Virus record (IMG/VR): IMGVR_UViG_3300046559_001153 | Span: 124,001 to 188,000 of that record | Length of the DNA: 64,000 nt | Strand: one strand, 5' to 3' | In this document: piece after piece, positions 40,955-56,883 of the stretch | How the letters are laid out: every line of letters starts with the position of its first letter | Numbering within the stretch: the stretch's first letter is position 1 | Made by a program: the position numbers and the translations under genes | Notes under the pieces: model-generated | Told to the model about the DNA's origin: nothing | Database searches by the model: none | Seen by the model: the letters and a program-made list of their open reading frames with translations, nothing else

Positions 40955-40960
40955 GTAATC

Positions 40961-41674: not shown

Positions 41675-44600
41675 ATGTCAATCCTGTCTGGCTCCGGCAG
41701 CCTGCTCCAGCCGATGCGCCCTGCGGCCCACGAGGATGAGCCTGACAGCCTCACAGACATGTCCAAAGCGCGTCAAAGGCTGTTTGACCACACCTTGACG
41801 GCTGCGCAAGGCCTGGAGCCCCTGGCGAACTCCAAGCACACGTTAAAGCTGACCGACGTCCACTATTCTGGCCCGGACGAGTATTCTCTAAAGGACCAGA
41901 AGAAAGCCATTCTGACAGGTGACACGCTTGGCCGGACGCTGAAAGGCACATTCCAGCTTCTGGATAACGTCACAGGCCAGCTGGTCGACCAGAAACGGGT
42001 GACACTGGCTAACGTGCCTTACCGGACGGACCGTGGTACGTTCATCCACAATGGGACTGAATACGCCGTTCGAAATCAGATGCGGTTGTTGCCTGGTGTC
42101 TTTACCCGTATTCGAGGCAACGGCGAGATTGAAGCCCACACGAACGTTATGCCTGGGAAGGGGCTGAGCCACCGCTACTTTCTAGATCCTGACAAAGGCG
42201 TGTTCTACATTCGCGTAGCCCAGTCCAAGACGCCGCTAGTGTCGTTGCTCACCGCAATGGGCGTGACCCACCATCAATTGCGTGACGCCTGGGGCCCCGA
42301 GTTGGCCGCGACCAACTTGACGCATAACGATCCGGCTGACGTAAAGAAACTGGCCGGGAAATTTCTCCCGCGGATCCCCGAGAATCAGACCGAGGCGCAC
42401 ACGACTGAGCAACTGGTAAATGCCTTTCAGGCCATGGAGCTCGATCCGGAAGTCACTAAACGAACGCTCGGGCACCCATTTACCAATGTCGGACCGGAGA
42501 CCATTCTTCGAACGACACAGAAACTGCTTCAATTGCAAAAGGGCGAAGTTGAGCCCGACGATCGTGACCACCTGGCCTACCAGAAAATCATGGCGCCCGA
42601 GGATTTGTTCTCGGAACGGATTCGTCGCGATGCTGGCAACATTCGCCGTCAGCTGTTGTTCAAAGCCAGTCAGCGTGGCAATCTGCAGGGCATTGGTTCC
42701 CGACCGTTCCAGAAGCAATTGAACTCGGTCATCCTCACCAGCGGTGTCGGTACGGGTCTTGAGGAAACATCACCGCTCGAACTGCTGGACAAGATGTCAA
42801 CGATCACCAGCATGGGTGTCGGTGGACTACCAAGCACGACAGCCATTCCGTTGGAGTCCCGAGCCGTACAGCCAAGCCATCTCGGATTCATGGATCCACT
42901 GAAGACGCCCGAAAGCGAGGCGGCTGGCGTTATTCTGAATATCGCCGGACAGGTCCGTCGTAAGGCTGATGGGCAGCTCGCCAAACAATTCACCAATCTG
43001 CACACGGGGCAACTCGAGTGGCGTACCCCGCAGGACGTGGCTGATTCAGCCATCGCCTTCCCGGGTGAAATGGCCAAACCGGGCAAACGAATCATAGCCA
43101 TGTTGAATGGTAAGCTGCAGTATGTGTCCAAAGCCGATGTCAAATACGAGCTGCCGCATTTCGAACACGTCTTCAGCGACGTCACCAATCTGGTGCCGAT
43201 GAAGTCGGCTTTGAAGGGCCAGCGGGCAGTGATGGGTGCCCGTATGTTGACGCAAGCCCTGCCGCTCGAGAACCCCGAAGCCCCATTCGTTCAGTCGGCT
43301 GTTCCGGGAACGGGCGGGCAGAAGAGTTTTGACGAACACTTCGGTGGATTCATGGGTGCCGTGCGAGCCAAGCAGGGTGGTCAGGTCACTGCCGTATCGC
43401 CGGAAGCCATCACGGTCAAGCACGACGACGGAACGACGCAGAACTACGAGTTGTATGACTCGTTTCCGTTCAATCGCCGTAGCCGACTGCACAATACGCC
43501 AATGGTGCAACCGGGCCAGCGTGTCGGTCCGGACGATCTTCTGGCTAAGTCCAACTTCACCAACGACAACGGGGCAATCGCGATCGGCAAGAACGCCTAC
43601 ATCGGATACATGCCGTATGGAGCCGGCACCTACGAAGACGCCCAGCTGGTGTCGGAGAGCTTCGCCAAGAAACTGCGATCAGAACATTTGTACCAGCACG
43701 ACGCGACCTGGGGTGACGCACTCGATAAGAAAGGCAAAGCGCCATACGTGTCGCTGTTCCCGTCGAAGTTTGACCGAAAGCAGTTGGACACGATCGACGA
43801 GGATGGGGTCGTCAAGCCGGGCACGGTTGTTGATTACGGCCACCCACTCATTCTGCTGGCAAAGGGGCGAGAGCACTCGCAAAGCAAAGTGCATCGCAAG
43901 GGCCAGCTACAGCACACCGACGCGTCGGTGACCTGGTCGTACAACTCACCCGGTATCGTCCGCGACGTAGTGAAGACAGACAAAGGACCGATGGTCACTG
44001 TGACGTCTATGCGGTCGACACAGGAGTCAGACAAGTTGAGTGACCGATTCGGCGCCAAGGGTGTTATCGGCAAGATTCTGTCGGACGACTTGATGCCGCG
44101 TGACAGCACGGGTCGCCCATTCGACATGTTACTGAATCCGGCTGGTATCCCGTCGCGACTCAATCCGGTGAAGATCCACGAAGCCACACTCGGCAAGATT
44201 GCGGAAAAGACTGGCAAGCCGTACAAAATTGAGGATTTTTCGAACATTGCCGACCTGCGAGCCTTCGTCGAACAGGAAGCCCAGAAGCATGGCGTACCCG
44301 ACACAGAGACGGTCTTCGACCCAGGTACCAACAGATACATCCCCGGCGTGAAGACTGGCGTGCAGTGGATCATGAAGCTGCACCATATCGCCGAAGACAA
44401 AGAACAGGGTCGCGGTGCCTCGGGTGGTTACACACTCAGCGGTGTACCGGCCAAGGGTGGTGACGGTGAGTCAAGTAAGAAGCTGTCCATGGGGGAAACG
44501 AATGCCCTGTTGTCTCACGGTGCGTTGAATCTGCTGCGTGATTCGCAATTGTTACGAGGCCAGCGAAACGAACCATATTGGCTGGCCTTCATGCAGGGGC

Positions 44601-46093
44601 ACCGCCCGCCCGAGCCCGGTATCCCGCTTGTTTACGAGGAATTCATCAACGAATTGAAAGCTGCTGGGATCAACCCAGTTCGCAACGGGGCCAGCATGAA
44701 CGTCATGGCCTTGACGAACAAGGACATTGACCAGTTGTCGGGCGGCCGCGAATTGCAAAATGGGAACACGGTCAACTTTGACGGTGATCTGAGCCCGGTG
44801 GCCGGCGGCTTGTTCGATCCAGCTTTGACTGGCGGGCATATGGGCCGCCGATGGTCGCACGTAACGCTGGCCGACCCGATGCCCAATCCGGTGATGGAAG
44901 AGCCTATACGTAAACTGCTGGCCCTGACTAAGAACAAATTCGAAGGGGTTCTGGCTGGGACTGAATCGATCGGTTCGCACGGTACAGGACCGCAAGCTCT
45001 GTTCAAAGCCCTGCAGGGGATCAATCTGGACAAGGAGCTTTTGCTCGCCAGGATGCAGATCAAGTCGGGCAAGAAAACAGCCCGTGATGTGGCCGTTCGC
45101 AAACTAGGGTATCTCAAAGCAGCCAAGTCGCTGGGGATCCACCCGTCAGACTGGATGCTCGACAAAGCACCAATTCTTCCCCCCCTCTTTCGTCAGGTGG
45201 CGAAGATTTCCGATTCGGGCCAACCAATTATTTCCGATGCCAATTACCTTTACAAAGAGCTGATTGACGCGAATACGACGCTCAAGAAGCTGAAGGGGGT
45301 GGTGGGTGAAAACGTGGGTCAAGAACGCCTTGCGTTATATAACTCGTTCAAAGCAGTCACTGGCCTGGGCGACCCAAGCCATCCGAAACTGGTCGAGAAG
45401 GGAGTCAAAGGCCTGCTTGCCGGGATCTTCGGAAGTAGTCCCAAGTGGGGCTCAGTCCAGTCCCGATTACTCAGTACCCCTGTGGATATTGTTGGGCGTG
45501 CCACTGTACAGCCCAACGCCGACCTCGACATGGATTCCATTGGACTTCCCGAAGAACGAGCCTGGACCGTCTACAAAAACTTCATAGTCCGTCGCCTTAA
45601 ACGCCAAGGCATGCCGTTGACGAATGCCCTGCAGGCTCACAAGGATCAGACCCCGCTGGCGAAGAAAGCCCTGCTTGATGAGCTGGAGACGCGACCAGTT
45701 ATCTACAGCCGGGCGCCCATCCATCATAAGTACGGGATCATGGCCGCTTGGCCGCAGCTGGTGAAAGGTAACGCCGTTCACTTGTCACCGCTGGTGACGG
45801 TTGGATTTGGTGCGGACTTTGATGGCGATCAGATGAACTACCATGTGCCTGTGAGTGATGCGGAAGTGCAGGACGCTGTCGAGCGAATGCTGCCGTCTCG
45901 CAATTTGATCAGCCCGGCCGACTTTCGAACGCCCATGTTCATGCCACGGCACGAAATGCTAATGGGATTGTTCGAATCAACCAGACCGGATAGAATTGGT
46001 CGAAGTATCACATTTCGCAATAAGCAAGACGCTATTGCCGCTTATCGACGCGGAGAGTTGACCGTGCAGGATTCGGTGACAATTCTCCATTGA
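41675..46093 (+). CDS. rpoBC: DNA-directed RNA polymerase beta subunit fused to the N-terminal catalytic half of beta'
   Basis: Beta motifs: VPYRTDRGTFIHNGTE, DPLKTPES, DKLSDRFGAKGV, LNPAGIPSRLN, KLHH, ELKAAGIN. Beta' motifs after about 44696: GGLFD, PILPP, SDANYLY, PVDIVGR, SRAPIHH and catalytic GADFDGDQM (45809-45829). Confidence 0.95.
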   Translation: MSILSGSGSLLQPMRPAAHEDEPDSLTDMSKARQRLFDHTLTAAQGLEPLANSKHTLKLTDVHYSGPDEYSLKDQKKAILTGDTLGRTLKGTFQLLDNVTGQLVDQKRVTLANVPYRTDRGTFIHNGTEYAVRNQMRLLPGVFTRIRGNGEIEAHTNVMPGKGLSHRYFLDPDKGVFYIRVAQSKTPLVSLLTAMGVTHHQLRDAWGPELAATNLTHNDPADVKKLAGKFLPRIPENQTEAHTTEQLVNAFQAMELDPEVTKRTLGHPFTNVGPETILRTTQKLLQLQKGEVEPDDRDHLAYQKIMAPEDLFSERIRRDAGNIRRQLLFKASQRGNLQGIGSRPFQKQLNSVILTSGVGTGLEETSPLELLDKMSTITSMGVGGLPSTTAIPLESRAVQPSHLGFMDPLKTPESEAAGVILNIAGQVRRKADGQLAKQFTNLHTGQLEWRTPQDVADSAIAFPGEMAKPGKRIIAMLNGKLQYVSKADVKYELPHFEHVFSDVTNLVPMKSALKGQRAVMGARMLTQALPLENPEAPFVQSAVPGTGGQKSFDEHFGGFMGAVRAKQGGQVTAVSPEAITVKHDDGTTQNYELYDSFPFNRRSRLHNTPMVQPGQRVGPDDLLAKSNFTNDNGAIAIGKNAYIGYMPYGAGTYEDAQLVSESFAKKLRSEHLYQHDATWGDALDKKGKAPYVSLFPSKFDRKQLDTIDEDGVVKPGTVVDYGHPLILLAKGREHSQSKVHRKGQLQHTDASVTWSYNSPGIVRDVVKTDKGPMVTVTSMRSTQESDKLSDRFGAKGVIGKILSDDLMPRDSTGRPFDMLLNPAGIPSRLNPVKIHEATLGKIAEKTGKPYKIEDFSNIADLRAFVEQEAQKHGVPDTETVFDPGTNRYIPGVKTGVQWIMKLHHIAEDKEQGRGASGGYTLSGVPAKGGDGESSKKLSMGETNALLSHGALNLLRDSQLLRGQRNEPYWLAFMQGHRPPEPGIPLVYEEFINELKAAGINPVRNGASMNVMALTNKDIDQLSGGRELQNGNTVNFDGDLSPVAGGLFDPALTGGHMGRRWSHVTLADPMPNPVMEEPIRKLLALTKNKFEGVLAGTESIGSHGTGPQALFKALQGINLDKELLLARMQIKSGKKTARDVAVRKLGYLKAAKSLGIHPSDWMLDKAPILPPLFRQVAKISDSGQPIISDANYLYKELIDANTTLKKLKGVVGENVGQERLALYNSFKAVTGLGDPSHPKLVEKGVKGLLAGIFGSSPKWGSVQSRLLSTPVDIVGRATVQPNADLDMDSIGLPEERAWTVYKNFIVRRLKRQGMPLTNALQAHKDQTPLAKKALLDELETRPVIYSRAPIHHKYGIMAAWPQLVKGNAVHLSPLVTVGFGADFDGDQMNYHVPVSDAEVQDAVERMLPSRNLISPADFRTPMFMPRHEMLMGLFESTRPDRIGRSITFRNKQDAIAAYRRGELTVQDSVTILH

Positions 46094-46105
46094 GGGGGGA
46101 GTTGT

Positions 46106-46678
46106 ATGACTCGACGCAAAATTTGCACATACTGCGGTAAATTGAAAGCGACTAGCGCGTACGGTAAAAAAGGCGCTGGGCTTAATCATCATTGCAAAGA
46201 TTGTGACAGCATCAAGCAACAAGCTTTCGCAAAAACCCCCCACGGCCGAGCGGTTAAAGCTTGGAATTTGATCAAGTATCGTGTCAGAAACCCGTACGGG
46301 AAAAATAAGACGTATGTTGGTGTTGAACTCCGGATGACTCGCGACGAATTCATGACCTGGGCTGTTCCGGCTTATACCGCATGGGTTACTGATGGAAATC
46401 TGATTGAATCGGCTTCTGTGGATCGAAAAGAAGACGGGCATTACGCGATCGGAAATCTTCAGATCATTTCTCGGGTTGAAAACGCCAAAAAGCAAAAACG
46501 TAATAAAAACGTACACGCTCCGGCCGGCCACGCGTGGTGCCCTAGCTGTGTCCAGTACAAATTGAAATGTGAGTTCTACACGGACAAGGCTAGTTGGAAT
46601 GGCGTAAGTTGCCGTTGCCGACAATGTCACAACCAATATCACCGCAATTATTACAGACAGCGACAATTATCTAAATGA
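46106..46678 (+). CDS. Free-standing HNH-like homing endonuclease with Cys-rich zinc-finger modules
   Basis: SVDR...GHYAIGNLQIIS..EN core flanked by CxxC pairs. Visibly more AT-rich than its neighbours; starts 12 bp after the RNAP stop. Confidence 0.7.
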   Translation: MTRRKICTYCGKLKATSAYGKKGAGLNHHCKDCDSIKQQAFAKTPHGRAVKAWNLIKYRVRNPYGKNKTYVGVELRMTRDEFMTWAVPAYTAWVTDGNLIESASVDRKEDGHYAIGNLQIISRVENAKKQKRNKNVHAPAGHAWCPSCVQYKLKCEFYTDKASWNGVSCRCRQCHNQYHRNYYRQRQLSK

Positions 46679-46814
46679 CGTAAGTCCGAAGCCTGCCGTG
46701 AATTACAGCCAGCCCCGAAAATTCCTCCCGATTATTTGGAATTTCGTCTATGGGATCAGCCCTTGATATGGTCTATTTGCTGGGTGGCTGACAACCTAGA
46801 AGGGCTGGTATGCG

Positions 46815-47312
46815 ATGACTGACGCCGAATATCTAGTACAGGCGTATCTTCTGGCTCGCGATCAATCACCTGACCCCCGCACGCAAAACGCAGCGCTGCT
46901 GGTTGAACCTGGCGGCGATGTGGTTTGCCAAGCTGTGAACAAATTTCCCCCCGGAGTCGTCGTATCGGCTGACAGGTGGGAACGCCCACTCAAGTATGAG
47001 TACGTCGAGTGCGCGGAACGCAACTCGATTTATGAGTGCGCGAGACTGGGGATTAAGACCAGTGACCTGGTGATGTACGCGGCCTGGGCCTCGTGCGCTA
47101 ATTGTGCCCGAGCGATCATCCAGGCCGGCATCAAACTGCTGGTGACCCACCGACCGGCTGACGCTGACAACGGTACGTGGGGTGACATCATCGCGAGAGC
47201 TGATGGCATGATGCGTGAGGCGGGGGTTGAACTTCGCTTCGTTACTGAAAGATTGTTTACTCATGATGACGAATTTTTTGTTCGTCGAAACGGAAAGGCA
47301 ATGAAGCCGTGA
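46815..47312 (+). CDS. dCMP deaminase-like zinc deaminase
   Basis: SPDPRTQ.AA, CAERNSI (CAE in place of HAE), SCANCARAIIQAGIK. Confidence 0.85.
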   Translation: MTDAEYLVQAYLLARDQSPDPRTQNAALLVEPGGDVVCQAVNKFPPGVVVSADRWERPLKYEYVECAERNSIYECARLGIKTSDLVMYAAWASCANCARAIIQAGIKLLVTHRPADADNGTWGDIIARADGMMREAGVELRFVTERLFTHDDEFFVRRNGKAMKP

Positions 47313-47946: not shown

Positions 47947-48813
47947 ATGCCAAAAAAGCGAGCCAGTAAGAAACAACCGATTAACAATCTGGTCGTCATC
48001 AGCGACACGCACTGCGGGTGTGGGCTGGCGATCATGCCAGGCCCGGTCAAACTTGACCAGGCAAATGTTGTCCATCCATCACCACTGCAGAAGATCATCA
48101 AAGGCCACTGGGACGAGTTCTGGGGCCAGCACGTGCCCGACGCGACTCATGGCGAACCGTACGCCGTTGTTCACAACGGCGATTGCATTGACGGTGTCCA
48201 TCACAACTCGACGACGCAGATCACGCACAATCTGGCCACACAGGCTCAGATGGCAATTGATCTGATGAGACCGATCGTCGATGGCTGTGATGGGCGTTAC
48301 TACCACATCCGCGGGACTGAGGCCCATGTGGGGAAGTCTGCGGAGAAGGAAGAAGAAGTGGCCAAGGCGTTGGGGGCAATTCCCAACGAGGACGGCCTGT
48401 TCGCTCGATACGACCTGTGGACGATGGTCGGCACCGGGCTGGTTCACCTGTTGCACCACATTGGGACGACAGGTAGTCAGGCGTACGAGTCGACGGCCAT
48501 CCACAAGGAGCTTGTCGAGTCGTTCACTGAGGCTGGACGATGGGGACGACGCCCACCAGACATCATCGTTCGCAGCCACCGTCATCGAGCAATCGAGACG
48601 AACATTCCCACGCACAACGGCAAAGCTCGTGCTGTTGTGACTGCCTGTTGGCAGGGCAAGACGCCGTTCGTGTGGAAAATTCCTGGCGGCCGAATCAGTA
48701 CCCCTCAGTTTGGCGGGCTCGTGATCCGGTACGCGAGAGATTCGAACGTGCTGTTCATTCGTGAACGCATCTGGTCCATTGCCCCATCTGCCACGGAGAT
48801 CATTGAACTATGA
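47947..48813 (+). CDS. Calcineurin-like metallophosphoesterase
   Basis: ISDTHCG, HNGDCIDG, RGTEAH, HH, RSHRH. Confidence 0.85.
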   Translation: MPKKRASKKQPINNLVVISDTHCGCGLAIMPGPVKLDQANVVHPSPLQKIIKGHWDEFWGQHVPDATHGEPYAVVHNGDCIDGVHHNSTTQITHNLATQAQMAIDLMRPIVDGCDGRYYHIRGTEAHVGKSAEKEEEVAKALGAIPNEDGLFARYDLWTMVGTGLVHLLHHIGTTGSQAYESTAIHKELVESFTEAGRWGRRPPDIIVRSHRHRAIETNIPTHNGKARAVVTACWQGKTPFVWKIPGGRISTPQFGGLVIRYARDSNVLFIRERIWSIAPSATEIIEL

Positions 48814-49115
48814 CGACAAACAGCGAAATCACTTTAGACCAACTGGTCAGCGAGATGAATCGCCTGACCGCATCAAAGAAAGACAACGACGGAGGTTTTA
48901 CTTCGAAGGAGCTTCGAATCAGTTCAGGTTACAGCCTGCGTAAAGCGAACGCGGTGCTCCGACAGATTATCGAGAGCGGGTTGGTCACTGTCAGACGAAG
49001 TCCGCGAAAAAACATTGTCGGGGAGGACTCCATGGTTCCTGTGTATTTCCCCACAGAAAAGCTTATCAGACTGAGTAAAAAGAAGGTGCAGAAGAAACAA
49101 AAACAAGCTAAATAA
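48810..49115 (+). CDS. Small basic, possibly winged-helix protein
   Basis: ATGA-coupled to the phosphoesterase; FTSKELRISSGYSLRKANAVLRQII. Confidence 0.6.
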   Translation: MTTNSEITLDQLVSEMNRLTASKKDNDGGFTSKELRISSGYSLRKANAVLRQIIESGLVTVRRSPRKNIVGEDSMVPVYFPTEKLIRLSKKKVQKKQKQAK

Positions 49116-49142
49116 CCAGCGTTTTCAAGGCATAAACCTTGT

Positions 49143-49176
49143 ATGGGCGGCACTTCGGTGTCGCCCATTTTCTTTT
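49143..49176 (+). terminator. Rho-independent terminator (UUCG loop)
   Basis: ATGGGCGGCAC-TTCG-GTGTCGCCCAT followed by TTTCTTTT. Confidence 0.85.
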
Positions 49177-49200
49177 GTATCCCGCTAAAAGGACACACAC

Positions 49201-49677
49201 ATGCCCCTATTCAGAATGACGTACGCCGACCAATTCAAACGGCGCCCGGATGGTGAAGTCGTGAACGAGCGACGGCCGCACATTATCCCAACAAGTCCCG
49301 AAGCGGCTGATTTTCTCGTGAGAGCTCGAACAGACAACAGATGTTTTCGGTCGTTGATCGGCCCCATGTCGCTGGGCGGCCTGGGAGAAGCTAATGTCGG
49401 TGGGGTGTGGGTTCCCTCACTTCGGTATTTGCCGGTCGAGGCCCAGGAGCCCAACTTCGAGATCAATCTGGTCGAGATGACGGTTAAGCTCGAGCGACGC
49501 ATGGACCAGTACGAACGAACGAGGCTGGTCACACTCGAGTTGGAAACGGATCTTGACCCGGACACGCTGTTCGATCGCGTCAACTGTTTGAATACTGCAA
49601 CGCTCTATTCGAAATCGGGTCAGTTGCTCGGTGAAGTCTTACGTGTGAAAGACGATCCGCTTGAGGTGTCAGCATGA
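49201..49677 (+). CDS. Hypothetical protein
   Basis: 158 aa with an AAAAGGA RBS. Confidence 0.65.
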   Translation: MPLFRMTYADQFKRRPDGEVVNERRPHIIPTSPEAADFLVRARTDNRCFRSLIGPMSLGGLGEANVGGVWVPSLRYLPVEAQEPNFEINLVEMTVKLERRMDQYERTRLVTLELETDLDPDTLFDRVNCLNTATLYSKSGQLLGEVLRVKDDPLEVSA

Positions 49678-50069
49678 CCGGCGCAAAGGCCAGACTATTG
49701 GCGACATGGCACGAGGCTCAGGCCAAAATGTTACGTGATATGGCTGTTGTTCTTGACCAGCATGAACCGGCAATCGCTGTGCCTCGGGTTATGAGCGATT
49801 TTTCTGGTCTAAACAAAATGACACGAACCAAGGTCGAGAAATTGGAGAAGTCGATCGAAGAATTGTGCGAAATGAGCATACCGGATTTGTTAATGATCCG
49901 AGGTTTCGGATTCTGGACAGTCGAATATATCCGCCGGTTTCTCAAAGACCTCGGTTTGTCGCTCCGAGGCGACCCTGGCGGTTACATTGATCCAGAGGCA
50001 TACTCACGATTGCGCGGTGAGGCGATAGCCGTCAGAGACTACCAGAAGAAATTGGCTGGCCCGGAATAA
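49674..50069 (+). CDS. RNA polymerase alpha C-terminal-domain (HhH)-like protein
   Basis: SIEELCEMSIPDLLMIRGFGFWTVEYIRRFLKDLGLSL resembles the alpha-CTD segment ELLKxxNLGKKSLxEIKxxLxxxGLSL. Confidence 0.6.
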   Translation: MTGAKARLLATWHEAQAKMLRDMAVVLDQHEPAIAVPRVMSDFSGLNKMTRTKVEKLEKSIEELCEMSIPDLLMIRGFGFWTVEYIRRFLKDLGLSLRGDPGGYIDPEAYSRLRGEAIAVRDYQKKLAGPE

Positions 50070-50112
50070 TCCGGGCCATTTTCGTTCCTGTAACTAATTG
50101 AAAGGATTTCAA

Positions 50113-50316
50113 ATGGTTTCCAGTGATCGTCTCCGTCCGAGCTTGGCCAAACGACTCCATCGCCTGGACGACGAAGAAGACAAGATTTCGCGACAGACAC
50201 TGACAGCTCAAAATTTGCGGCGTCTGTGCCGCATCCGTTTGTGTCGGGAACGCGTGATTGAGTATCTCGATGCATTCGACATGATGCGAATCAACGCAGT
50301 CTACAGCCCGGTCTAA
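50113..50316 (+). CDS. Hypothetical protein
   Basis: GAAAGGA RBS before ATG 50113. Confidence 0.5.
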   Translation: MVSSDRLRPSLAKRLHRLDDEEDKISRQTLTAQNLRRLCRIRLCRERVIEYLDAFDMMRINAVYSPV

Positions 50317-50356
50317 CCGGGCTGCTTCATCCCCCCCCCGCTTAAAAGGTGTAAAG

Positions 50357-50599
50357 ATGACCAAACAAATTGATTTGACTGACGGATGGGCTCGGGAAGA
50401 TCAACGGTTTCGCGATCTGGCTTTGGGGCGATCGAAATTACGATCGATTATGGACATACCGGCAGCGTCGCCGAAATCGCCATGTTTTGACATACGTCGC
50501 AGAACAGTTTTAGCGATTCGTCATGGTCTGGTTGTGATGCTCCACGCTGACCTTGTCGACGACAAATACGACGGGAGTAGCCATGAAGAAACCGACTAA
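50357..50599 (+). CDS. Hypothetical protein
   Basis: 80 aa with an AAAGG RBS. Confidence 0.5.
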   Translation: MTKQIDLTDGWAREDQRFRDLALGRSKLRSIMDIPAASPKSPCFDIRRRTVLAIRHGLVVMLHADLVDDKYDGSSHEETD

Positions 50600-51026
50600 T
50601 CGTTTTGCCCATACAGTGGCGAGGCTGGCAATAGCCGCGTTGTCTGAAATGGCAAAGCGGCTAGACAGCGAGGCCCAGCAGATGCTGCAAGACAAAGTTT
50701 TTGACGAGTCTCGCATCATTCGAATACTTTATCAGTCCACCGGGGTGAGCCTGGGTCATGAGCAGCTGCACTCGGATTCGGCAAATGATGCCGACGACGA
50801 GATGCTAGCCGATCTGGACGCGACGGTGATGCTTTGCCAGACGTCCTGCCGACTGTTAGCGAAATCAGCTCTGCAGGACAGTTCAGACCCGAAAGCCCAC
50901 GTTCAACGGGTAACTGAACGGGTTGCCAATCTGCTCATGGCCGATCCGATTATGGGTCCTTTGGCGATGAAGAGGGCTAAGCTCGATCTCAGAGCTCGTC
51001 AGCCCGAACCTGGAACAACAGGCTGA
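50583..51026 (+). CDS. Hypothetical protein
   Basis: GGGAG RBS before ATG 50583. Confidence 0.6.
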   Translation: MKKPTNRFAHTVARLAIAALSEMAKRLDSEAQQMLQDKVFDESRIIRILYQSTGVSLGHEQLHSDSANDADDEMLADLDATVMLCQTSCRLLAKSALQDSSDPKAHVQRVTERVANLLMADPIMGPLAMKRAKLDLRARQPEPGTTG

Positions 51027-51036
51027 CGGATGTAGC

Positions 51037-51070
51037 GGCTGGTAGGGAATTTCCCTATCAGCCTTTTTTT
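51037..51070 (+). terminator. Rho-independent terminator
   Basis: GGCTGGTAGGG/CCCTATCAGCC stem followed by T7. Confidence 0.85.
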
Positions 51071-51089
51071 AGCTATCAGCCTGACCATC

Positions 51090-51119
51090 TTGCTCCCCTT
51101 GACCTTGTCAGCGTATACT
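51090..51119 (+). promoter_or_regulatory. Sigma70-like promoter TTGCTC-N18-TATACT
   Basis: Follows the terminator and precedes ATG 51133. Confidence 0.4.
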
Positions 51120-51132
51120 GAGGACTACAAGC

Positions 51133-51333
51133 ATGACTCCTGACCTGCTGCAACTCGAATCATCCTCGTACGGCGATCTGCTAGGCCAGATCCGCTATTG
51201 GAAAAACCACGGGTATGACCTGGTCTCAGGCACTTTCAGGTATCATCGAAAGTACGTAGTTTTGATGCAGAAACGAGTCGACCACAAACCGGCCAGACTC
51301 GTCGTAAGCATCGGTCGTCCGACATTCAAATAA
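51133..51333 (+). CDS. Small hypothetical protein
   Basis: 66 aa with a GAGGA RBS. Confidence 0.55.
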   Translation: MTPDLLQLESSSYGDLLGQIRYWKNHGYDLVSGTFRYHRKYVVLMQKRVDHKPARLVVSIGRPTFK

Positions 51334-51354
51334 CCAATCGCAAGGAGGCGAAAC

Positions 51355-51681
51355 ATGTCTGCTTCTGTTTCATTGACTGATCTTCAGCAAGTTGCCGGTG
51401 CCGTGGGCGCTGTGAACGCCGCGGGCCACGCAGTTCCACTGACCGTTGTTCCTGTCTGGGCCGGTGCCGACCCAGCGGTCGTCAAGCTGATTCCGTCGGC
51501 TGACGGTCTGTCGTGCGAAGTTGTCGCAGTCGCCGTTGGCTCGACAGCCTTTACCGTCACAGCCACGTTGGCTGACGGTACGGTCATCACCGCTCCGTCC
51601 GTCCCGGTGACCGTTTCGGCCTCGGTAGCCGTCGGTCTGGTTGTGACCATTGGCACCCCGGAACTCATTCCGGCCAGCTAA
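51355..51681 (+). CDS. Ig-like domain protein (possible virion decoration)
   Basis: Val/Thr/Ala-rich beta-strand pattern VVKLIPSADGLSCEVVAVAVGSTAFTVTA; AAGGAGG RBS. Confidence 0.65.
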   Translation: MSASVSLTDLQQVAGAVGAVNAAGHAVPLTVVPVWAGADPAVVKLIPSADGLSCEVVAVAVGSTAFTVTATLADGTVITAPSVPVTVSASVAVGLVVTIGTPELIPAS

Positions 51682-51717
51682 TTCCTTTTTTGATTCAGTC
51701 CATTGGAGCCACTGGCT

Positions 51718-52455
51718 ATGTCCATCTTGAATCTTGCTGCGCTGCGAATGGCAAAAACGGCTGTTGCAAGCGCAAAGGTCGCGTTTACTCCAATGGATCC
51801 GTCACAGATGGCTGGCCAGCAAGGTGGCCAGCCCGGCGGTGACCCAGGTGCCGCACAGGGCGGCCCTGTCGATCCGTCACAGATCTCCGGGATCGGCTCG
51901 CAGTCTGGCTCGTCTGGTTCCGGCGGTGGCGCCGTAGACCAGGAAATGATTCGAAATGTCCTGCGACAAGAGTTACAGCAGATTCTGCCCCAAATGGGCG
52001 GTGGTGGCGGGGGTGCCGGTGGTGGCATGGGCCCCGGAGGCAAACCAATGAAGCTCGACGTTGGTGTTGAGCTTCACCGTTTGAACGTCATGCTGGCCAA
52101 GATCATCGACGCACTGGGTCTTCAAATCCCGGCGTCTGACATGGTCACGACCGAGGAACAGGGACAGCAACCCAGTGCACAGAATGCTGGCATGACGGGA
52201 GCTCCACAGCCCCCGGCCAGCTCGATATCGCCGATTCAGCCGATGCAGCCGGCCGGCCCCGGGCAACAGCAGCAGCATCAGCAGCATCAGCACCAGGCGA
52301 CCGACAAGGCGTCCCTGGCGGACGAGACGGCCCGCAAATTCATGGACCAGGGTGAGTGCAACTCGGAAGAAAGCATTCTCCCACTCTCGACGTCGGCCGC
52401 CGCGGCCAGCCTTATCATGCGTCACCTGCCCGCCATACAGGACCAGATTGCCTGA
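51718..52455 (+). CDS. Gly/Gln/Pro-rich putative virion or scaffold-like protein
   Basis: AKTAVAS, AKVAF and DKASL motifs; low-complexity linkers. Confidence 0.7.
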   Translation: MSILNLAALRMAKTAVASAKVAFTPMDPSQMAGQQGGQPGGDPGAAQGGPVDPSQISGIGSQSGSSGSGGGAVDQEMIRNVLRQELQQILPQMGGGGGGAGGGMGPGGKPMKLDVGVELHRLNVMLAKIIDALGLQIPASDMVTTEEQGQQPSAQNAGMTGAPQPPASSISPIQPMQPAGPGQQQQHQQHQHQATDKASLADETARKFMDQGECNSEESILPLSTSAAAASLIMRHLPAIQDQIA

Positions 52456-52694
52456 TGTACATCGAAGCCATCGAACGATTCGGTAAGCCGCCCGTGCGGT
52501 TGGAAGTCAGTCAGGTCGTCATTTACCGAGACGACGGAACCCCCATCTCGCTGGCCAGTTTGTACGGCCCCGATGGGGCCATTTTCGTTGAAACGGCCGA
52601 GGATCCGGAAAAATTCAACAAGGCCCTGCAGACACTGGGGATCGATAAAACAGTCATCGTCGACAACCTGGTCATGTCCGAACCAACCCAATAA
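52455..52694 (+). CDS. Small hypothetical protein
   Basis: TGATG-coupled; MYIEAIERFGKPPVRLEVSQVVIY. Confidence 0.65.
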   Translation: MYIEAIERFGKPPVRLEVSQVVIYRDDGTPISLASLYGPDGAIFVETAEDPEKFNKALQTLGIDKTVIVDNLVMSEPTQ

Positions 52695-52709
52695 CTTTTT
52701 ACAAAGTTA
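52692..52709. promoter_or_regulatory. Palindromic motif, copy 5
   Basis: TAACTTTTTACAAAGTTA (identical to copy 1), 22 nt before ATG 52732. Confidence 0.8.
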
Positions 52710-52731
52710 CAGAGACCAGCAGGTAGGCAAG

Positions 52732-55700
52732 ATGCCCGCGACCTTCATAGGGAAAATGGGTCAGCTGCTGGTCAACGAGGCTCTGCCCGAAGATCTGCGT
52801 AACGGTAAGACCCTGGATTCAAGGGGCTTGACCGACCTGCTGCGGGATGTGGCTGAACGTCACCCCGACAAGTACCGGGACATCTCACACAAGTTGACCC
52901 AGCTGGGTGAAGACGCAGCTCAGCAACTCGGCGGCTATTCGTTCGGGCTCAATGCCATGCGACGGGCCGGGTCAGCCAATGTCATTCGCGATCGCATCAA
53001 AAGCCAGGTTCAGTCACTGCTCGACAATGACAACCTGTCAGATGATGCACGCGAGTCCCAGATCGTCAAACTCCTGGGTCAGGCCCAGTCAGAACAAGAG
53101 AACGCCGTCTACGACGAGAGTTTGAAAGAGAACAATCCGATCGCCTTGCAGATCAAGTCAGGCGCTCGCGGCAAGAAGATGGCTCTCAATTCTCTGCGTG
53201 GGTCCGATCTGCTGTATGTCGACCATCGCGACCGGCCAGTGCCCATCCCCGTCCTGCGGAGTTACCCTGAGGGCCTGTCGCCGGCCGAGTATTGGGCTGG
53301 GGCCTATGGTGCTCGTCACGGCATTGTCAGTGTGAAGCTGGGCACAGCCCAGTCAGGCTTCCTGGCGAAACAACTCAATCAAGCGACCCACCGGCTGATT
53401 GTGACGCATGAGGATGACGCTCCGGTCGATACGGTCCGAGGCCTGCCAGTCCCTGTCGACGATAACGACAATGTGGGGGCCTTGCTGGCCCATCCGGCTG
53501 GTGGTTTTGGGCGGAACACGGTTCTGACGCCCAAGGTTCTGAAGTCCCTGCATGATGGCGGCATTCAGAGAATTCTGGTACGCAGCCCGACTGTTGGCGG
53601 GGCACCTGATGGGGGTCTCTACTCACGCGATGTTGGCATTCGAGAAACTGGCGGTCTGCCGCCCAAAGGAACGTTCTCCGGTCTGCAGGCCGGTCAGGCG
53701 ATCTCTGAGCCGTTGTCGCAGGCCACCTTGTCCGCCAAGCACGCAGGGGGCGTTGCCGGAGCATCCAAATCAGTGTCAGGCTTTGCCTGGATCAACGCCC
53801 TGGTTCAGATCCCCAAGGTATTTCCTGGCGGGGCAACGCATTCAGAAGTAGACGGGCGTGTGCAGCAGATTACCAAGGCACCTGGCGGCGGTTTGCACGT
53901 GCAGGTGAACGGACTGGAGCATTACGTGCCGCACGGGCTGGCTTTGACAGTTGCCCCGGGCGACGCGGTTGAAGCTGGCGACGTGCTCAGTGAGGGCATT
54001 CCCAGCCCGGCCGAGATCGTCAAGCACAAGGGAATTGGTGAAGGTCGCCGGTACTTTGTGGATGCCATGCGTAAAGCATTGACCGACTCTGGTGTTCGAA
54101 ACAATCGCCGAAATCTCGAACTCATCAGTCGTGGTCTGATCAATCACGTCGAGCTCGACGCGGAGATCGGCGAACACGCGCCAGACGACGTTGTCCCATT
54201 CGACACGATCGAACGGGATTACGAGCCGAGAGAAGGCAGTCACACGCTGCCTGTCCACCAGGCAATCGGCCAGTATCTCGAGAAGCCCTACCTGCACCAC
54301 ACGATTGGTACGAAGGTCAAATCGAGCATGTTGCCGGACTTCAAGCATTTTGGAGTTGAATCGGTTCACGTGCACAAAGATCCGCCGCTATTCCATCCGC
54401 TCATGGTTCGCGGTATGTACAACTTGCAGCACGACCCGGACGCCATGACAAGGAATCTAGGTTCAGGGCTGCAGGCAAGCTTCCTGGACTCGGTCCACCG
54501 TGGCGGCGGCAGCGACGAAAAGGGTACCAGCTATGTTCCCGGCCTGGCCCGTACTGTGGATTTTGGCCGCATTGGCGTTATCCGGCCGACTGTGGTTACA
54601 CCGCAGAGATCGACTATGAAAATCGCAGCTGGCAGCCCGATTGCCCCGGCTCTCGACCCGAAACCGGCTCCCATCAAACCACTGGCGCCACCACAGCCTC
54701 AAATAAAACCGATTGCTCCTCCACCGTCGCCGGCTTTGCAGGCGAAGCCTCAATCTGTGCTGGGCGATAGTTCGATCAACGGGTTCGGTGACTTCTTCCA
54801 TCATGCCGGTAATCTGCTGCGTGGGCCCGGGTACGACGCCGGGATGGCACCGGCAACTGCCGGTTTCAAGAACACGATGACGCCGCAGCAGTTTGGCCAA
54901 CAGATGCGGACTGATCTTCCCGGTCTGCCTAATCCGGTTGCACCAGCCGCACAACCCGGAGTATGGGATCAAGCGAAAGCCATAGCGCCTGGCCTGGCTA
55001 CCAATCTCGGGGTTAATGTAGCTGGGCAGCAGATAGCAAAAAATACGTTGGTGCGAGCCGTTCCCAGATTAGGAGTAGGTGCCGCCTCAAAGCTCTTGCC
55101 TCTCGGTATCGGCGCCGCAGTTGCCGAGCCGATTGGGTGGCTCGGTAAAAAGACCGGAATTCCAGGCTTCGAAAACGATGCAGCATATGACACCAATGCG
55201 TATCGTCAAGAGGCCGAAGGTTTGCACTACGGGATGCCGGCCGGCTGGCGTCAGGACACCAATCGACCGTGGTATATTCGAATGGGAGACTGGTTGGCCA
55301 ATGACGCAGGAACAGCCGTAATGCAGCCTCAGACGGCCGTCATGAACGCGTTTGGCAAGTCGAGCGATGACGCCTTGGGAATTCCTTCTCGCGACGAGAT
55401 GGGAGACTTATCCAAGCTCGAAACGGGCAAGCTCTATGACCTGTTTACACAGCTCCATAACGCCACCAAAGCCGGTCCCCACACTGATCTGAGGATTGGC
55501 GATCCGGAGCAGGGGCTGCACTCTTGGGCCGTGCCGAAGGGTTTACCCGAGTCTGGGAAGAAGCATCTGGCTGTCCACCAGCCAATTCACGAGCATTCCT
55601 ACGGGGGCTGGTCGGGCACGATTCCCGAGGGCGAATACGGGGCCGGTACGGTCAAGAGTCAGATCAAGGGCAAGGCCCTGGTGACCGAGTCGGGTCCGGG

Positions 55701-56883
55701 CAAACTGCATTTTACGACAGCTCACATGAAGCATCCCGAGCGGTTCACTGTGGTGGCGCCAAAAAGCTTCGGTGAAAACAATCACCTGCTGCTCAACACG
55801 ACGCCGACCGAGCCGCTGCCGTACCAGAAGATCCACTACAAGAAAGTTCCGACCGAACAGGTCGAAGGAAAGTTGAAGGAGTTAGAACCCGGTTCGTCGG
55901 TGCAGGCCAAGATTGACGGTGCATCGAGCCTGGTCAAACTGCTCAAGGATCAGCTCGAACTGTATTCGTACCGGGCATCAAAGCCGACAGGAAAACCAAT
56001 CATTCACACGGAGAAGGTGTTACATGGCCGGCCTCGGATTGAGATCCCTCCTGAGTACCACAACAGCATCCTGCGCGGTGAGTTACACGGGGTCAAGCAA
56101 GACTCCGAAGGAAAAGAAACGGTTATTCATCCCAGCGAACTTGGTGGTATCCTCAACTCAACGATTGCTCACTCGCTGGCAAAACAAGAGACCTCAGGCG
56201 TTCGGCTCCGTAACGCACTGTTCGACATTCAACAGGTTGGCAACACGCCAATTGACTTCTCCAAGACGCCATATTCTGAACGTCGGGAACACTTGAAGAG
56301 CATTCTGCCGTCGCTGCCGCAGGACATTTTTCACTTGACCGACGAAGCCAAGACACCGGAAGATGCGCTGAAGTTGTGGAAAGACATTGGTAGCGGGGAT
56401 CACCCGAAAACTGAGGAAGGAATCGTTATCCACTCTCCAACGGGCAAGCCCCAGAAGGCTAAGTACATTGAAGATCACGACGTTCACATCCGCGGTATTT
56501 TCCCTGGCGAAGGCCGTCTTGCTGGAACTCATGCCGGCGGCTTTGAGTACTCTGCTGAGCCTGATGGTCCTATTCTCGGCCGTGTTGGCACTGGCTTTTC
56601 TGACGATGTTCGTCGCCAGATGCATGATCGACCTGACGATTTCGTGGGGCGGGTTGCCCGGGTGAAGTCCCAGGAGAAGTTGCAGTCGGGTGCGTTGAGA
56701 GCTCCGGCTTATATCGCTCTCCACGAAGATTACCCAGTGTCGTCGGCTTTGAATAAGGCGGCCGAGCTAGAACGCGTCCGTCTGCGTGTGAAAGAATTGG
56801 CAGAGAAAAAGGCGACCGCTTCTCCAATTTCTCTGGCCAGAGAACGCCTTCAAGCTATCCGAGCGAAAAATTTGGGCCTATAA
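52732..56883 (+). CDS. rpoC: Fusion protein: RNA polymerase beta' C-terminal half + Pro/Gly-rich linker + LigD 3'-phosphoesterase domain + ATP-dependent DNA ligase
   Basis: Beta' motifs: KSGARG, SYPEGLSPAEY..GAYGARHG...TAQSGFL, GLQAGQAISEPLSQATLSAKHAGG. PE motifs: QLH...HTDLR, SWAVPKG, H..SY, GTIPEGEYGAGTV. Ligase motifs: KIDG, RGEL, LFDI, EEGIVI, KAK, GRVGTGFSD. Start moved to ATG 52732 (AGGTAGG RBS). Confidence 0.92.
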   Translation: MPATFIGKMGQLLVNEALPEDLRNGKTLDSRGLTDLLRDVAERHPDKYRDISHKLTQLGEDAAQQLGGYSFGLNAMRRAGSANVIRDRIKSQVQSLLDNDNLSDDARESQIVKLLGQAQSEQENAVYDESLKENNPIALQIKSGARGKKMALNSLRGSDLLYVDHRDRPVPIPVLRSYPEGLSPAEYWAGAYGARHGIVSVKLGTAQSGFLAKQLNQATHRLIVTHEDDAPVDTVRGLPVPVDDNDNVGALLAHPAGGFGRNTVLTPKVLKSLHDGGIQRILVRSPTVGGAPDGGLYSRDVGIRETGGLPPKGTFSGLQAGQAISEPLSQATLSAKHAGGVAGASKSVSGFAWINALVQIPKVFPGGATHSEVDGRVQQITKAPGGGLHVQVNGLEHYVPHGLALTVAPGDAVEAGDVLSEGIPSPAEIVKHKGIGEGRRYFVDAMRKALTDSGVRNNRRNLELISRGLINHVELDAEIGEHAPDDVVPFDTIERDYEPREGSHTLPVHQAIGQYLEKPYLHHTIGTKVKSSMLPDFKHFGVESVHVHKDPPLFHPLMVRGMYNLQHDPDAMTRNLGSGLQASFLDSVHRGGGSDEKGTSYVPGLARTVDFGRIGVIRPTVVTPQRSTMKIAAGSPIAPALDPKPAPIKPLAPPQPQIKPIAPPPSPALQAKPQSVLGDSSINGFGDFFHHAGNLLRGPGYDAGMAPATAGFKNTMTPQQFGQQMRTDLPGLPNPVAPAAQPGVWDQAKAIAPGLATNLGVNVAGQQIAKNTLVRAVPRLGVGAASKLLPLGIGAAVAEPIGWLGKKTGIPGFENDAAYDTNAYRQEAEGLHYGMPAGWRQDTNRPWYIRMGDWLANDAGTAVMQPQTAVMNAFGKSSDDALGIPSRDEMGDLSKLETGKLYDLFTQLHNATKAGPHTDLRIGDPEQGLHSWAVPKGLPESGKKHLAVHQPIHEHSYGGWSGTIPEGEYGAGTVKSQIKGKALVTESGPGKLHFTTAHMKHPERFTVVAPKSFGENNHLLLNTTPTEPLPYQKIHYKKVPTEQVEGKLKELEPGSSVQAKIDGASSLVKLLKDQLELYSYRASKPTGKPIIHTEKVLHGRPRIEIPPEYHNSILRGELHGVKQDSEGKETVIHPSELGGILNSTIAHSLAKQETSGVRLRNALFDIQQVGNTPIDFSKTPYSERREHLKSILPSLPQDIFHLTDEAKTPEDALKLWKDIGSGDHPKTEEGIVIHSPTGKPQKAKYIEDHDVHIRGIFPGEGRLAGTHAGGFEYSAEPDGPILGRVGTGFSDDVRRQMHDRPDDFVGRVARVKSQEKLQSGALRAPAYIALHEDYPVSSALNKAAELERVRLRVKELAEKKATASPISLARERLQAIRAKNLGL

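What the first reader, a model, noticed from the sequence alone, without database searches (positions are those of the whole stretch)
41675..56883. Both RNAP polypeptides (about 2,850 aa) contain no cysteine and have lost both beta' zinc sites
Seen: I found no Cys in the 1472-aa ORF or in 52732-56883. The beta' N-terminal zinc-binding domain is deleted (GGLFDPALTGGHMGRRWSHV). The second site is substituted (VRSPTVGGAPDGGLYSRDVG versus VRSxxxC...GVCxxCYG), and beta CPIETPEG has become DPLKTPES. Accessory genes in the same window are Cys-rich. Established: the N4 virion RNAP is Cys-free and is injected with the DNA. Inference: this is a virion-packaged, ejected RNAP under selection against Cys and metal sites.
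Basis: partly seen in the sequence, partly recalled or inferred. Interest (0 to 1): 0.8.

Follow-up and report, generated by a model that had tools for sequence, protein, structure and literature searches.

The report
Cysteine-free, zinc-free phage virion RNA polymerase
A large uncultured phage encodes a bacterial-type RNA polymerase with no cysteine and neither of the usual zinc sites, a trait shared by hundreds of relatives, most likely because the enzyme is packed into the virus particle and injected; one subunit also carries a DNA-end-repair and ligase module.

Summary
ORF1 (41675-46093, 1472 aa) and ORF2 (52732-56883, 1383 aa) have 0 Cys where 42-47 are expected from the window's own genes (P about 1e-19 to 1e-21).

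The beta' N-terminal zinc-binding domain is cleanly deleted. All four ligands of the second zinc site are replaced by a conserved motif.

- ORF1 is a whole beta fused to the N-terminal half of beta'.
- ORF2 is the C-terminal half of beta' (about 620 aa), a proline-rich linker, then a LigD-type 3'-phosphoesterase and an ATP-dependent ligase.

Cysteine avoidance is family-wide. Homologs at about 50% identity have 0.03-0.06% Cys in the mature parts. Inteins inside the same genes have 1.6-1.8%. So selection acts on the finished protein.

The only cultured relative with proteomics, Salmonella phage Arash, has the same two-gene architecture. There the fused subunit is the most-detected virion protein. 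N4 virion RNAP also has 0 Cys in 3500 aa.

Best reading: a virion-packaged, ejected RNA polymerase. This is inferred, not shown for this phage.

The beta'C subunit carries hypervariable, equally Cys-free C-terminal domains across the family. I judge this a new variant of a known kind.

The parts
41675..46093 (+). ORF1, 1472 aa, 0 Cys: complete beta (aa 1 to about 1003) fused with almost no linker to the N-terminal half of beta' (about aa 1004-1472)
   Evidence: Pfam Rpb2 domains 2, 3 and 6 plus Rpb1 domain 2. BLASTP to E. coli RpoB 117-1336 and RpoC 181-550. More than 1000 homologs share the architecture.
42893..42916 (+). DPLKTPES (ORF1 aa 407-414), equivalent to E. coli beta CPIETPEG; the Cys is replaced by Asp
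   Evidence: Alignment. DPxRTPES is conserved in six family members and in Arash.
44804..44863 (+). Site of the deleted beta' N-terminal zinc-binding domain (ORF1 aa 1044-1063)
   Evidence: Alignment with E. coli RpoC residues 1-280. The same deletion boundaries occur in six family members and in Arash gp206.
45809..45829 (+). Catalytic GADFDGD (ORF1 aa 1379-1385), the Mg-binding aspartate triad of beta'
   Evidence: Motif found. It lies inside the Rpb1 domain 2 match.
52732..54591 (+). ORF2 core (aa 1-620), 0 Cys: C-terminal half of beta' with bridge helix and trigger loop
   Evidence: Pfam Rpb1 domain 5. BLASTP to RpoC 720-939 and 1187-1261. AlphaFold model pLDDT 78. Foldseek hits bacterial beta' at E about 1e-26, TM 0.62-0.65.
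53578..53637 (+). Former second zinc site (ORF2 aa 283-302): C888, C895 and C898 equivalents are G, Y and D
   Evidence: Alignment. The replacing residues are invariant or nearly so in 40 family members. Modelled with pLDDT 83-94.
54592..55371 (+). Pro-rich, predicted disordered linker with one Gly/Ala-rich hydrophobic segment (aa 780-798, nt 55069-55125)
   Evidence: pLDDT below 50 from aa 571. Hydropathy scan. Similar linkers occur in homologs.
55414..55731 (+). LigD-type 3'-phosphoesterase domain (ORF2 about aa 895-1000)
   Evidence: Pfam LigD_N 3e-12. TIGR02777. PDB 3p4h at 8e-12, with the H-x-D-x-R and H..Y..G.IP.G.YG.G motifs aligned.
55852..56751 (+). ATP-dependent ligase nucleotidyltransferase and OB domains (ORF2 about aa 1041-1340); motif I lysine K1060 in AKIDGA
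   Evidence: Pfam DNA_ligase_A_M and phrog_114. Motifs are conserved against a free-standing homolog at 48% identity.
40044..41659 (+). Three small ORFs directly upstream of ORF1 (169, 134 and 232 aa; 0, 1 and 0 Cys). They are conserved in relatives and are candidate co-packaged proteins. The last has a Gly-rich hydrophobic segment.
   Evidence: No family match.
46106..47312 (+). HNH/endonuclease VII (10 Cys) and dCMP deaminase (5 Cys), inserted after ORF1. They serve as contrast genes and are absent at this position in an 83%-identical relative.
57151..59652 (+). 833-aa protein whose C-terminus resembles Arash gp218, which was detected in Arash virions
   Evidence: tblastn. Arash proteome. 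36% identity to the syntenic gene of L004.
63518..64000 (+). Start of a gene resembling Arash gp222 (detected in Arash virions); 0 Cys in 161 aa
   Evidence: tblastn; Arash proteome.

Best explanation
The two genes encode the catalytic core of a bacterial-type multisubunit RNA polymerase of a large, mostly uncultured phage clade. The core comes as two polypeptides: beta fused to the N-half of beta', and the C-half of beta'. The enzyme is made late, packed into the capsid and ejected into the host with the DNA, where it transcribes phage genes without the host enzyme.

The mature protein must survive outside cells, pass through the tail and cell envelope, and become active at once. Selection has therefore removed every cysteine. 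The N-terminal zinc domain was deleted in the common ancestor with Arash-like phages. In this clade the second zinc site was replaced by a conserved metal-free motif.

The beta' C-half also acts as a carrier. After a disordered linker it bears a C-terminal domain that differs between phages. Here that domain is a LigD-like 3'-phosphoesterase plus ATP-dependent ligase, which would be delivered together with the polymerase and could heal and seal broken nucleic-acid ends at the start of infection.

Shown:
- the residue counts, the loss of both zinc sites, and the domain architecture;
- family-wide Cys avoidance limited to the mature parts;
- intact catalytic motifs.

Inferred:
- packaging and ejection in this phage;
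- the reason for Cys avoidance;
- co-delivery and the role of the ligase module.
For: - Zero Cys against 42-47 expected.
- In 120 ORF1 homologs, aligned residues carry 0.034% Cys, while inserts (inteins, homing endonucleases) in the same genes carry 1.62%.
- In 233 beta'C homologs, Cys is 0.063% in the core, 1.81% in internal inserts and 0.047% in C-terminal extensions.
- Arash has the same two-gene architecture. Gp206 (3516 spectra) is the most-detected protein in its virion preparation, and Gp216 gave 1210 spectra.
- Arash and D181 subunits have only 1-2 Cys beyond the four zinc ligands.
- N4 vRNAP and its two co-ejected proteins have 0 Cys. Cys suppression in ejected Schitoviridae proteins is published.
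- The phiKZ virion RNAP has half the Cys frequency of its non-virion RNAP.
- Downstream genes resemble Arash proteins detected in virions.
- A Cys-poor gene block surrounds the RNAP genes in a relative.
- The catalytic DFDGD, bridge helix and trigger-loop His are present. The fold matches bacterial beta'.
- Zn- and Cys-using enzymes occur in the same window, so the phage does not avoid Cys in general.
Against: - There are no proteomic or transcript data for this phage.
- Arash is only 26-30% identical, and its virion preparation listed 116 proteins, so some carry-over of abundant non-structural proteins is possible.
- The phiKZ virion RNAP is injected yet has 16 Cys and keeps the second zinc site. 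Injection therefore does not force complete Cys loss.
- The presumed virion protein 57151-59652 has 7 Cys.
- No sigma-like factor and no recognisable capsid, portal or terminase gene was found in the window.
Confidence: 0.7

Rival explanations
1. The polymerase is not packaged. It is an intracellular enzyme, and cysteine was lost for another reason, such as resistance to oxidants or thiol-reactive host defences, or activity inside an oxidising compartment.
For: - Packaging is not observed directly for this phage.
- The non-virion RNAP of AR9 also lacks the N-terminal zinc domain, so zinc-site loss alone does not mark a virion enzyme.
Against: - The Arash homolog is the top hit in the virion proteome.
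- The known non-virion multisubunit phage RNAP checked here (phiKZ) has ordinary Cys, 1.16%.
- The genes sit beside homologs of proteins detected in Arash virions.
- The only published precedent for near-total Cys loss in a phage RNAP concerns ejected proteins.
Confidence: 0.15
2. The absence of Cys is a by-product of base composition, mutation bias or lineage drift, without selection on the protein.
For: None found.
Against: - TGY codons number 41-81 in the other frames and 0 in frame. Codon-position shuffles never gave fewer than 6.
- Inteins inside homologous genes have 1.6-1.8% Cys while the exteins have 0.03-0.06%.
- The trait is kept across hundreds of homologs at about 50% identity.
Confidence: 0.02
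3. The fusion of beta'C to the phosphoesterase-ligase is an assembly or gene-calling artefact, and the ligase is really a separate gene as in relatives.
For: In a relative (L004) the homologous phosphoesterase-ligase is a free-standing 545-aa gene 4 kb upstream of the RNAP gene, and beta'C is only 641 aa.
Against: - 52732-56883 is one uninterrupted frame.
- A separate JGI contig (L011) carries the same junction at 100% identity.
- The expected upstream position in the window lacks a ligase gene.
- C-terminal extensions on beta'C are the rule in the family: 188 of 235 homologs, median 498 aa.
Confidence: 0.05

Closest known systems
Salmonella phage Arash Gp206/Gp216 (and Vibrio phages D181, D148, D69)
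   Same: - Same two-gene architecture: beta plus beta' N-half, and beta' C-half.
- Same deletion of the beta' zinc-binding domain.
- DPxRTPES in beta.
- Strongly Cys-poor.
- One RNAP locus per genome.
- Abundant in the Arash virion preparation.
   Different: - Only 26-30% identical.
- They keep the four Cys of the second zinc site.
- beta'C has no C-terminal extension (606-609 aa).
- In D181 the fused gene is split by a homing endonuclease.
phiKZ / AR9 virion multisubunit RNA polymerases
   Same: - beta/beta'-type enzymes packed in the capsid and injected for early transcription.
- beta' is split into N and C parts.
- The AR9-type virion enzyme carries a fused HD phosphohydrolase domain.
   Different: - They are built from four to five separate polypeptides, and a second non-virion set exists.
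- The phiKZ virion enzyme has 16 Cys and keeps the second zinc site.
- The ORF2 core model matches bacterial beta' best.
N4 virion RNA polymerase gp50 and Schitoviridae ejection proteins
   Same: - Giant packaged and ejected polymerase with 0 Cys.
- Cys suppression is conserved across the family and extends to co-ejected proteins.
   Different: - A single-subunit T7-like enzyme, unrelated in fold.
- It has no ancestral Cys-zinc sites to lose.
- The phages are podoviruses in which the ejected proteins build a trans-envelope conduit.
Bacterial RNA polymerase beta and beta'
   Same: - Catalytic DFDGD.
- beta lysine motif, read directly from the ORF1 sequence.
- Bridge helix, trigger loop and clamp helices.
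- Best structural match of the ORF2 core.
   Different: - Both zinc sites are absent.
- Gene boundaries are shifted: a beta-beta'N fusion and a split inside beta'.
- No alpha, omega or sigma gene was seen in the window.
Bacterial LigD (NHEJ ligase), phosphoesterase and ligase modules
   Same: A phosphoesterase domain followed by an ATP-dependent ligase domain, with conserved motifs.
   Different: - No polymerase/primase module.
- Scores lie far below the family cut-offs.
- Fused to an RNA polymerase subunit.
- Cys-free.
Thermus phage P23-45 tape-measure-fused virion RNAP; polyvalent injected proteins
   Same: A polymerase or enzymes fused to a carrier that leaves the virion with the DNA (abstract; polyvalent proteins mentioned).
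   Different: - The P23-45 enzyme is a different, single-chain two-barrel RNAP.
- Its carrier is the tape measure protein.

Membership tests
Multisubunit (two double-psi beta-barrel) RNA polymerase, bacterial beta/beta' type | beta' catalytic aspartate triad (NADFDGD) | tested here: met
   GADFDGD at ORF1 aa 1379-1385, inside the Rpb1 domain 2 match.
Multisubunit (two double-psi beta-barrel) RNA polymerase, bacterial beta/beta' type | beta catalytic barrel (Rpb2 domain 6) and beta' bridge helix and trigger loop | tested here: met
   Rpb2_6 at 1e-41 and Rpb1_5 at 3e-17. Alignment to RpoC 720-939. Foldseek to bacterial beta' at E 1e-26.
Multisubunit (two double-psi beta-barrel) RNA polymerase, bacterial beta/beta' type | beta' N-terminal zinc-binding domain, described as shared by all multisubunit RNAPs (Lane and Darst, cited in PMC7618050) | tested here: not met
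   Deleted in the alignment. AR9 nvRNAP is a published precedent for its absence.
Multisubunit (two double-psi beta-barrel) RNA polymerase, bacterial beta/beta' type | Second beta' zinc site (E. coli C814, C888, C895, C898) | tested here: not met
   No Cys at any of the four positions in the window or in seven family members. The site is kept in Arash and D181.
Virion-packaged, ejected phage RNA polymerase | Protein present in purified virions | not testable with these tools
   Shown only for the distant homologs Arash Gp206 and Gp216.
Virion-packaged, ejected phage RNA polymerase | Early transcription independent of host RNAP and of new protein synthesis | not testable with these tools
   Needs infection experiments.
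Cys-suppressed ejection proteins (as defined for Schitoviridae) | Cys frequency far below the proteome, conserved across homologs | tested here: met
   0% here against 1.65% for the window. Homologs have 0.03-0.06%. The published Schitoviridae values are 0.00075% against 0.865%.
LigD 3'-phosphoesterase | Metal-binding and catalytic His/Asp/Arg motifs of the PE domain | tested here: met
   H-x-D-x-R and the H..Y motif align with PDB 3p4h. The score is below the TIGR02777 cut-off (53 against 144), so this is a divergent member.
ATP-dependent DNA ligase | Motif I lysine (KxDG) and motifs III, IV and V | tested here: inconclusive
   KIDGA (K1060), GELHG, EGIV and KAK are present and conserved against the free homolog. 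Profile scores are weak: Pfam 25.6 against a 26.2 cut-off. The substrate, DNA or RNA, is unknown.

The most novel reading that the evidence does not exclude
The beta' C-half of this phage clade is a delivery platform. The polymerase carries into the host a hypervariable, Cys-free C-terminal enzyme. The sampled set holds at least 53 unrelated kinds, including phosphoesterase-ligase, pyrophosphatase, NUDIX and a P-loop kinase with acylphosphatase. An injected transcription machine would thus double as a polymorphic effector or repair injector. The core would also be the first bacterial-type multisubunit RNA polymerase that folds and works with no zinc and no cysteine at all.
Probability: 0.4. 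Interest if true: 0.8.

Novelty: new variant of a known kind. Interest (0 to 1): 0.62.

Why it matters
The two beta' zinc sites are treated as near-universal features of cellular-type RNA polymerases and are thought to help folding and assembly. A widespread natural clade that has removed both, together with every cysteine, shows what can replace them. It also offers a redox-insensitive, metal-site-free enzyme for structural and biochemical work.

The finding extends the "no cysteine in ejected proteins" rule from single-subunit N4-like enzymes to a multisubunit enzyme. With the intein/extein contrast, it gives a simple sequence signature for predicting injected proteins in uncultured phages.

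The variable enzymes attached to the beta' C-half suggest a way for phages to deliver repair or counter-defence activities at the first moment of infection.

Tried and rejected
- Megablast of ORF1 against 50,697 phage records found nothing, so there is no close cultured relative.
- Pfam, PHROGs and NCBIfam gave no function for most neighbours: 40044-41659, 47947-52455 and 57151-63511.
- ESM Atlas look-ups of 57151-59649 and 40961-41656 gave only weak, uninformative hits.
- No sigma factor, capsid, portal or terminase family was found in the window.
I reran it with permitted rows only.
- I tried to locate the ORF behind the dATP/dGTP diphosphohydrolase (MazZ-like) Pfam hit with one Pfam call and three PDB sequence searches. 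None found it.
- Codon reassignment as a cause was considered and dropped. All genes read as normal table-11 ORFs and the other genes contain Cys.
- General sulphur economy was dropped. Met is 2.2% in the RNAP against 2.9% background.
- A phylogeny placing this clade among phage and cellular RNAPs was not built.


Full report
**1. The observation**

Translation and counting confirm the claim. ORF1 (41675-46093, 1472 aa) and ORF2 from 52732 (1383 aa) contain no cysteine. The longest ORF for the second gene starts at 52573 and would add 53 residues with two Cys. The start at 52732 is better supported:
- Homologs align from their first residues to 52732.
- AGGTAGG lies a few bases upstream.
- An ORF in another frame ends at 52694.

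The 70 other plus-strand ORFs of the window have 1.65% Cys, or 1.48% without the very Cys-rich ORF 73-741. That predicts 42-47 Cys in 2855 residues, so the probability of zero is about 1e-19 to 1e-21. TGT/TGC occur 41-81 times in the two other frames of each gene and never in frame. Shuffling within codon positions gives about 17 per gene and never fewer than 6.

Neighbouring genes use Cys and zinc normally. The HNH/endonuclease VII gene at 46106-46678 has 10 Cys, and the dCMP deaminase at 46815-47312 has 5.

**2. What the two proteins are**

Pfam shows that the gene boundaries are not those of beta and beta'.

ORF1 carries Rpb2 domains 2, 3 and 6 (beta) followed by Rpb1 domain 2 (the catalytic barrel of beta'). 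BLASTP aligns ORF1 104-1000 to E. coli RpoB 117-1336, and ORF1 1105-1470 to RpoC 181-550. It is therefore a whole beta joined almost without a linker to the N-half of beta'. The catalytic triad is present as GADFDGD at aa 1379-1385.

ORF2 has three parts:
- Residues 1-620 are the C-half of beta' (Rpb1 domain 5; RpoC 720-939 and 1187-1261), with bridge helix and trigger loop.
- Residues 621-880 are proline-rich and predicted disordered, with one Gly/Ala-rich hydrophobic segment at 780-798.
- Residues about 895-1340 are a LigD-type 3'-phosphoesterase followed by an ATP-dependent ligase. The motif I lysine is K1060 in AKIDGA.

An AlphaFold model of residues 1-640, built with a 40-sequence family alignment, has mean pLDDT 78. 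It matches bacterial beta' chains with Foldseek E about 1e-26 and TM 0.62-0.65.

**3. The zinc sites**

I aligned ORF1 with E. coli RpoC, six family members and Arash Gp206. The N-terminal zinc-binding domain (C70, C72, C85, C88) is precisely excised, with the same boundaries in all the phage sequences.

At the second site, C888, C895 and C898 correspond to G, Y and D in ORF2, and there is no Cys at the C814 position. Seven family members show the same replacement. The replacing residues are invariant or nearly so in 40 sequences, and the segment is modelled with pLDDT 83-94. This points to a structured, metal-free substitute. A His-based metal site elsewhere cannot be excluded.

Arash Gp216 and Vibrio phage D181 beta'C keep all four Cys of the second site, and these are their only Cys. 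The N-terminal zinc domain was therefore probably lost before the two clades split, and the second site was lost only in the clade of this window.

**4. The trait is family-wide and acts on the mature protein**

ORF1 has more than 1000 homologs with the same fused architecture, mostly about 50% identical, on contigs up to 235 kb. Of the best 120, 86 have no Cys. Those with many Cys are the long ones that carry inteins or homing endonucleases.

| Protein set | Region | Residues | Cys | Cys % |
|---|---|---|---|---|
| 120 ORF1 homologs | aligned to ORF1 | 174,537 | 59 | 0.034 |
| 120 ORF1 homologs | unaligned inserts | 9,014 | 146 | 1.62 |
| 233 beta'C homologs | core | 143,179 | 90 | 0.063 |
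| 233 beta'C homologs | internal inserts | 26,545 | 481 | 1.81 |
| 233 beta'C homologs | C-terminal extensions | 113,111 | 53 | 0.047 |

Inteins are removed before the protein matures. The contrast within single genes therefore excludes composition or mutation bias. It shows selection on the finished polypeptide.

**5. Evidence for packaging**

No close cultured relative exists. The nearest phages are Salmonella phage Arash and Vibrio phages D181, D148 and D69, at 26-30% identity. They have the same two-gene architecture and one RNAP locus per genome.

In the Arash paper (PMC10585845), LC-MS of the virion preparation found Gp206 to be the most-detected protein, with 3516 spectra. Gp216 gave 1210 spectra. 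A sigma factor and the adjacent helicase were also detected. That preparation listed 116 proteins, so some carry-over is possible, but the top rank is hard to explain that way.

In the 30-kb Arash region I examined, I summed by hand the per-gene counts and split them by the detected list. Detected proteins have about 0.35% Cys and undetected ones about 1.1%.

In the window, 57151-59652 and 63518-64000 resemble Arash Gp218 and Gp222, both detected in Arash virions. The RNAP genes thus lie at the edge of a virion-gene block. In a relative on a 234,752-bp contig (L004), 10 of the 13 genes from locus position 6264 to 19275, around and including the RNAP genes, have no Cys.

**6. Precedents and controls**

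N4 vRNAP has 0 Cys in 3500 aa. So do the two co-ejected proteins, whereas N4 replication proteins have 0.75-1.4%.

The DEV study (PMC11445570) reports Cys at 0.00075% in vRNAP homologs against 0.865% in the proteomes. It links this to passage through the periplasm, where disulfide-forming enzymes act.

As a control among multisubunit enzymes, the phiKZ virion RNAP (gp80, 149, 178, 180) has 16 Cys in 2614 aa (0.61%). The non-virion RNAP (gp55, 68, 71, 73, 74, 123) has 33 in 2850 (1.16%). The non-virion beta'N carries the CxC...CxxC zinc domain. The virion subunit gp180, which I take to be its beta'N, has only two isolated Cys. Both enzymes keep the second site (zinc domain of gp55).

Packaging therefore goes with fewer Cys and with loss of the N-terminal zinc domain, but it does not force complete loss. 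The AR9 non-virion RNAP also lacks that domain.

**7. The C-terminal module**

Only this phage, among those sampled, has the phosphoesterase-ligase on beta'C. An independent JGI contig (L011) carries the same junction at 100% identity. In L004 the homologous module (48% identity over 489 aa, 1 Cys in 545 aa) is a free-standing gene 4 kb upstream of the RNAP gene, and beta'C is 641 aa. The catalytic motifs are conserved between the fused and free forms.

Across the family, extensions are the rule. 188 of 235 homologs have at least 60 aa beyond the core, with a median of 498 aa. The extensions fall into 53 unrelated BLAST groups among 186 compared. Identified contents include:
- an inorganic pyrophosphatase domain (1.8e-57);
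- NUDIX;
- acylphosphatase with a P-loop kinase;
- DUF4269 and DUF5661.

Many extensions begin with a Pro-rich linker and Gly/Ala-rich hydrophobic segments. A published parallel is the HD phosphohydrolase fused to the virion RNAP of AR9-like phages.

I infer that these domains travel with the polymerase. For the ligase module the likely roles are sealing nicks or ends of the incoming genome, or healing nuclease damage to DNA or RNA. None of this is shown.

**8. Verdict**

It is not demonstrated for this phage, and metal-site avoidance is not a general requirement.

Already known:
- virion multisubunit RNAPs;
- Cys suppression in ejected proteins;
- loss of the N-terminal zinc domain in AR9.

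New here:
- complete loss of both zinc sites and of all Cys in a bacterial-type RNAP clade;
- the beta-beta'N plus beta'C architecture as a large environmental family;
- the intein/extein contrast;
- the hypervariable Cys-free cargo on beta'C.

I found no paper describing these points. The library does not hold all journals.

Noticed in passing
window 6136-7356 (+), and one unlocated ORF among the 50 in alignment A1: A divergent adenylosuccinate-synthetase-like gene: PurA models score about 100 bits, the PurZ model 35 bits, all below cut-off. Somewhere in the window there is also a Pfam hit to dATP/dGTP diphosphohydrolase (MazZ-like, 5.8e-19). Together they hint at 2-aminoadenine (Z-base) DNA, but this is not established.
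   Followed up: partly
window 73-741 (+): A 222-aa ORF with 29 Cys (13%) and no family match. It is the extreme opposite of the RNAP genes.
   Followed up: no
window 46106-47312 (+): An HNH/endonuclease VII gene and a dCMP deaminase lie directly after ORF1. They are absent at this position in an 83%-identical relative (L012), so they are probably a mobile insertion.
   Followed up: partly
homologs of ORF1 and ORF2 (e.g. P0022, P0036, P0088, P0188, P0287): Inteins or LAGLIDADG endonucleases are inserted at several distinct sites, some recurring across homologs. In ORF1 they lie near aa 417-450, 605, 789, 1057 and 1385-1416. In ORF2 they lie near aa 197-212 and 324-336. In Vibrio phage D181 the fused gene is split by a free-standing homing endonuclease.
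   Followed up: partly
window 13786-17291 and 24543-36565 (+): A dense set of sugar and modification genes: PfkB kinase, D12 N6-adenine methyltransferase, three FkbM methyltransferases, several glycosyltransferases and a nucleotide-sugar epimerase (26015-27016). They may serve DNA hypermodification or surface-glycan synthesis.
   Followed up: no
window 37406-38080 (+); L004 5-535: A 2H-SAK (2H phosphoesterase) gene is conserved upstream of the RNAP block. Together with the phosphoesterase-ligase it looks like an end-healing and sealing (RNA or DNA repair) set.
   Followed up: no
window 38077-39141 (aa 302-326), 40961-41659 (aa 26-44), ORF2 aa 780-798, 62411-63511 (aa 101-119): Four Cys-free or Cys-poor proteins around the RNAP genes each have a single Gly/Ala-rich hydrophobic (glycine-zipper-like) segment. 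These could be membrane-active segments of ejected proteins.
   Followed up: partly
window 56905-57111 (+): A 68-aa Cys-free ORF with two strongly hydrophobic helices lies directly after ORF2. It is also present on the independent contig L011.
   Followed up: no
P0150 residues 638-656: One beta'C homolog has a CxxC...CxxC pair at the start of its C-terminal extension, a rare exception to Cys avoidance in the extensions.
   Followed up: no
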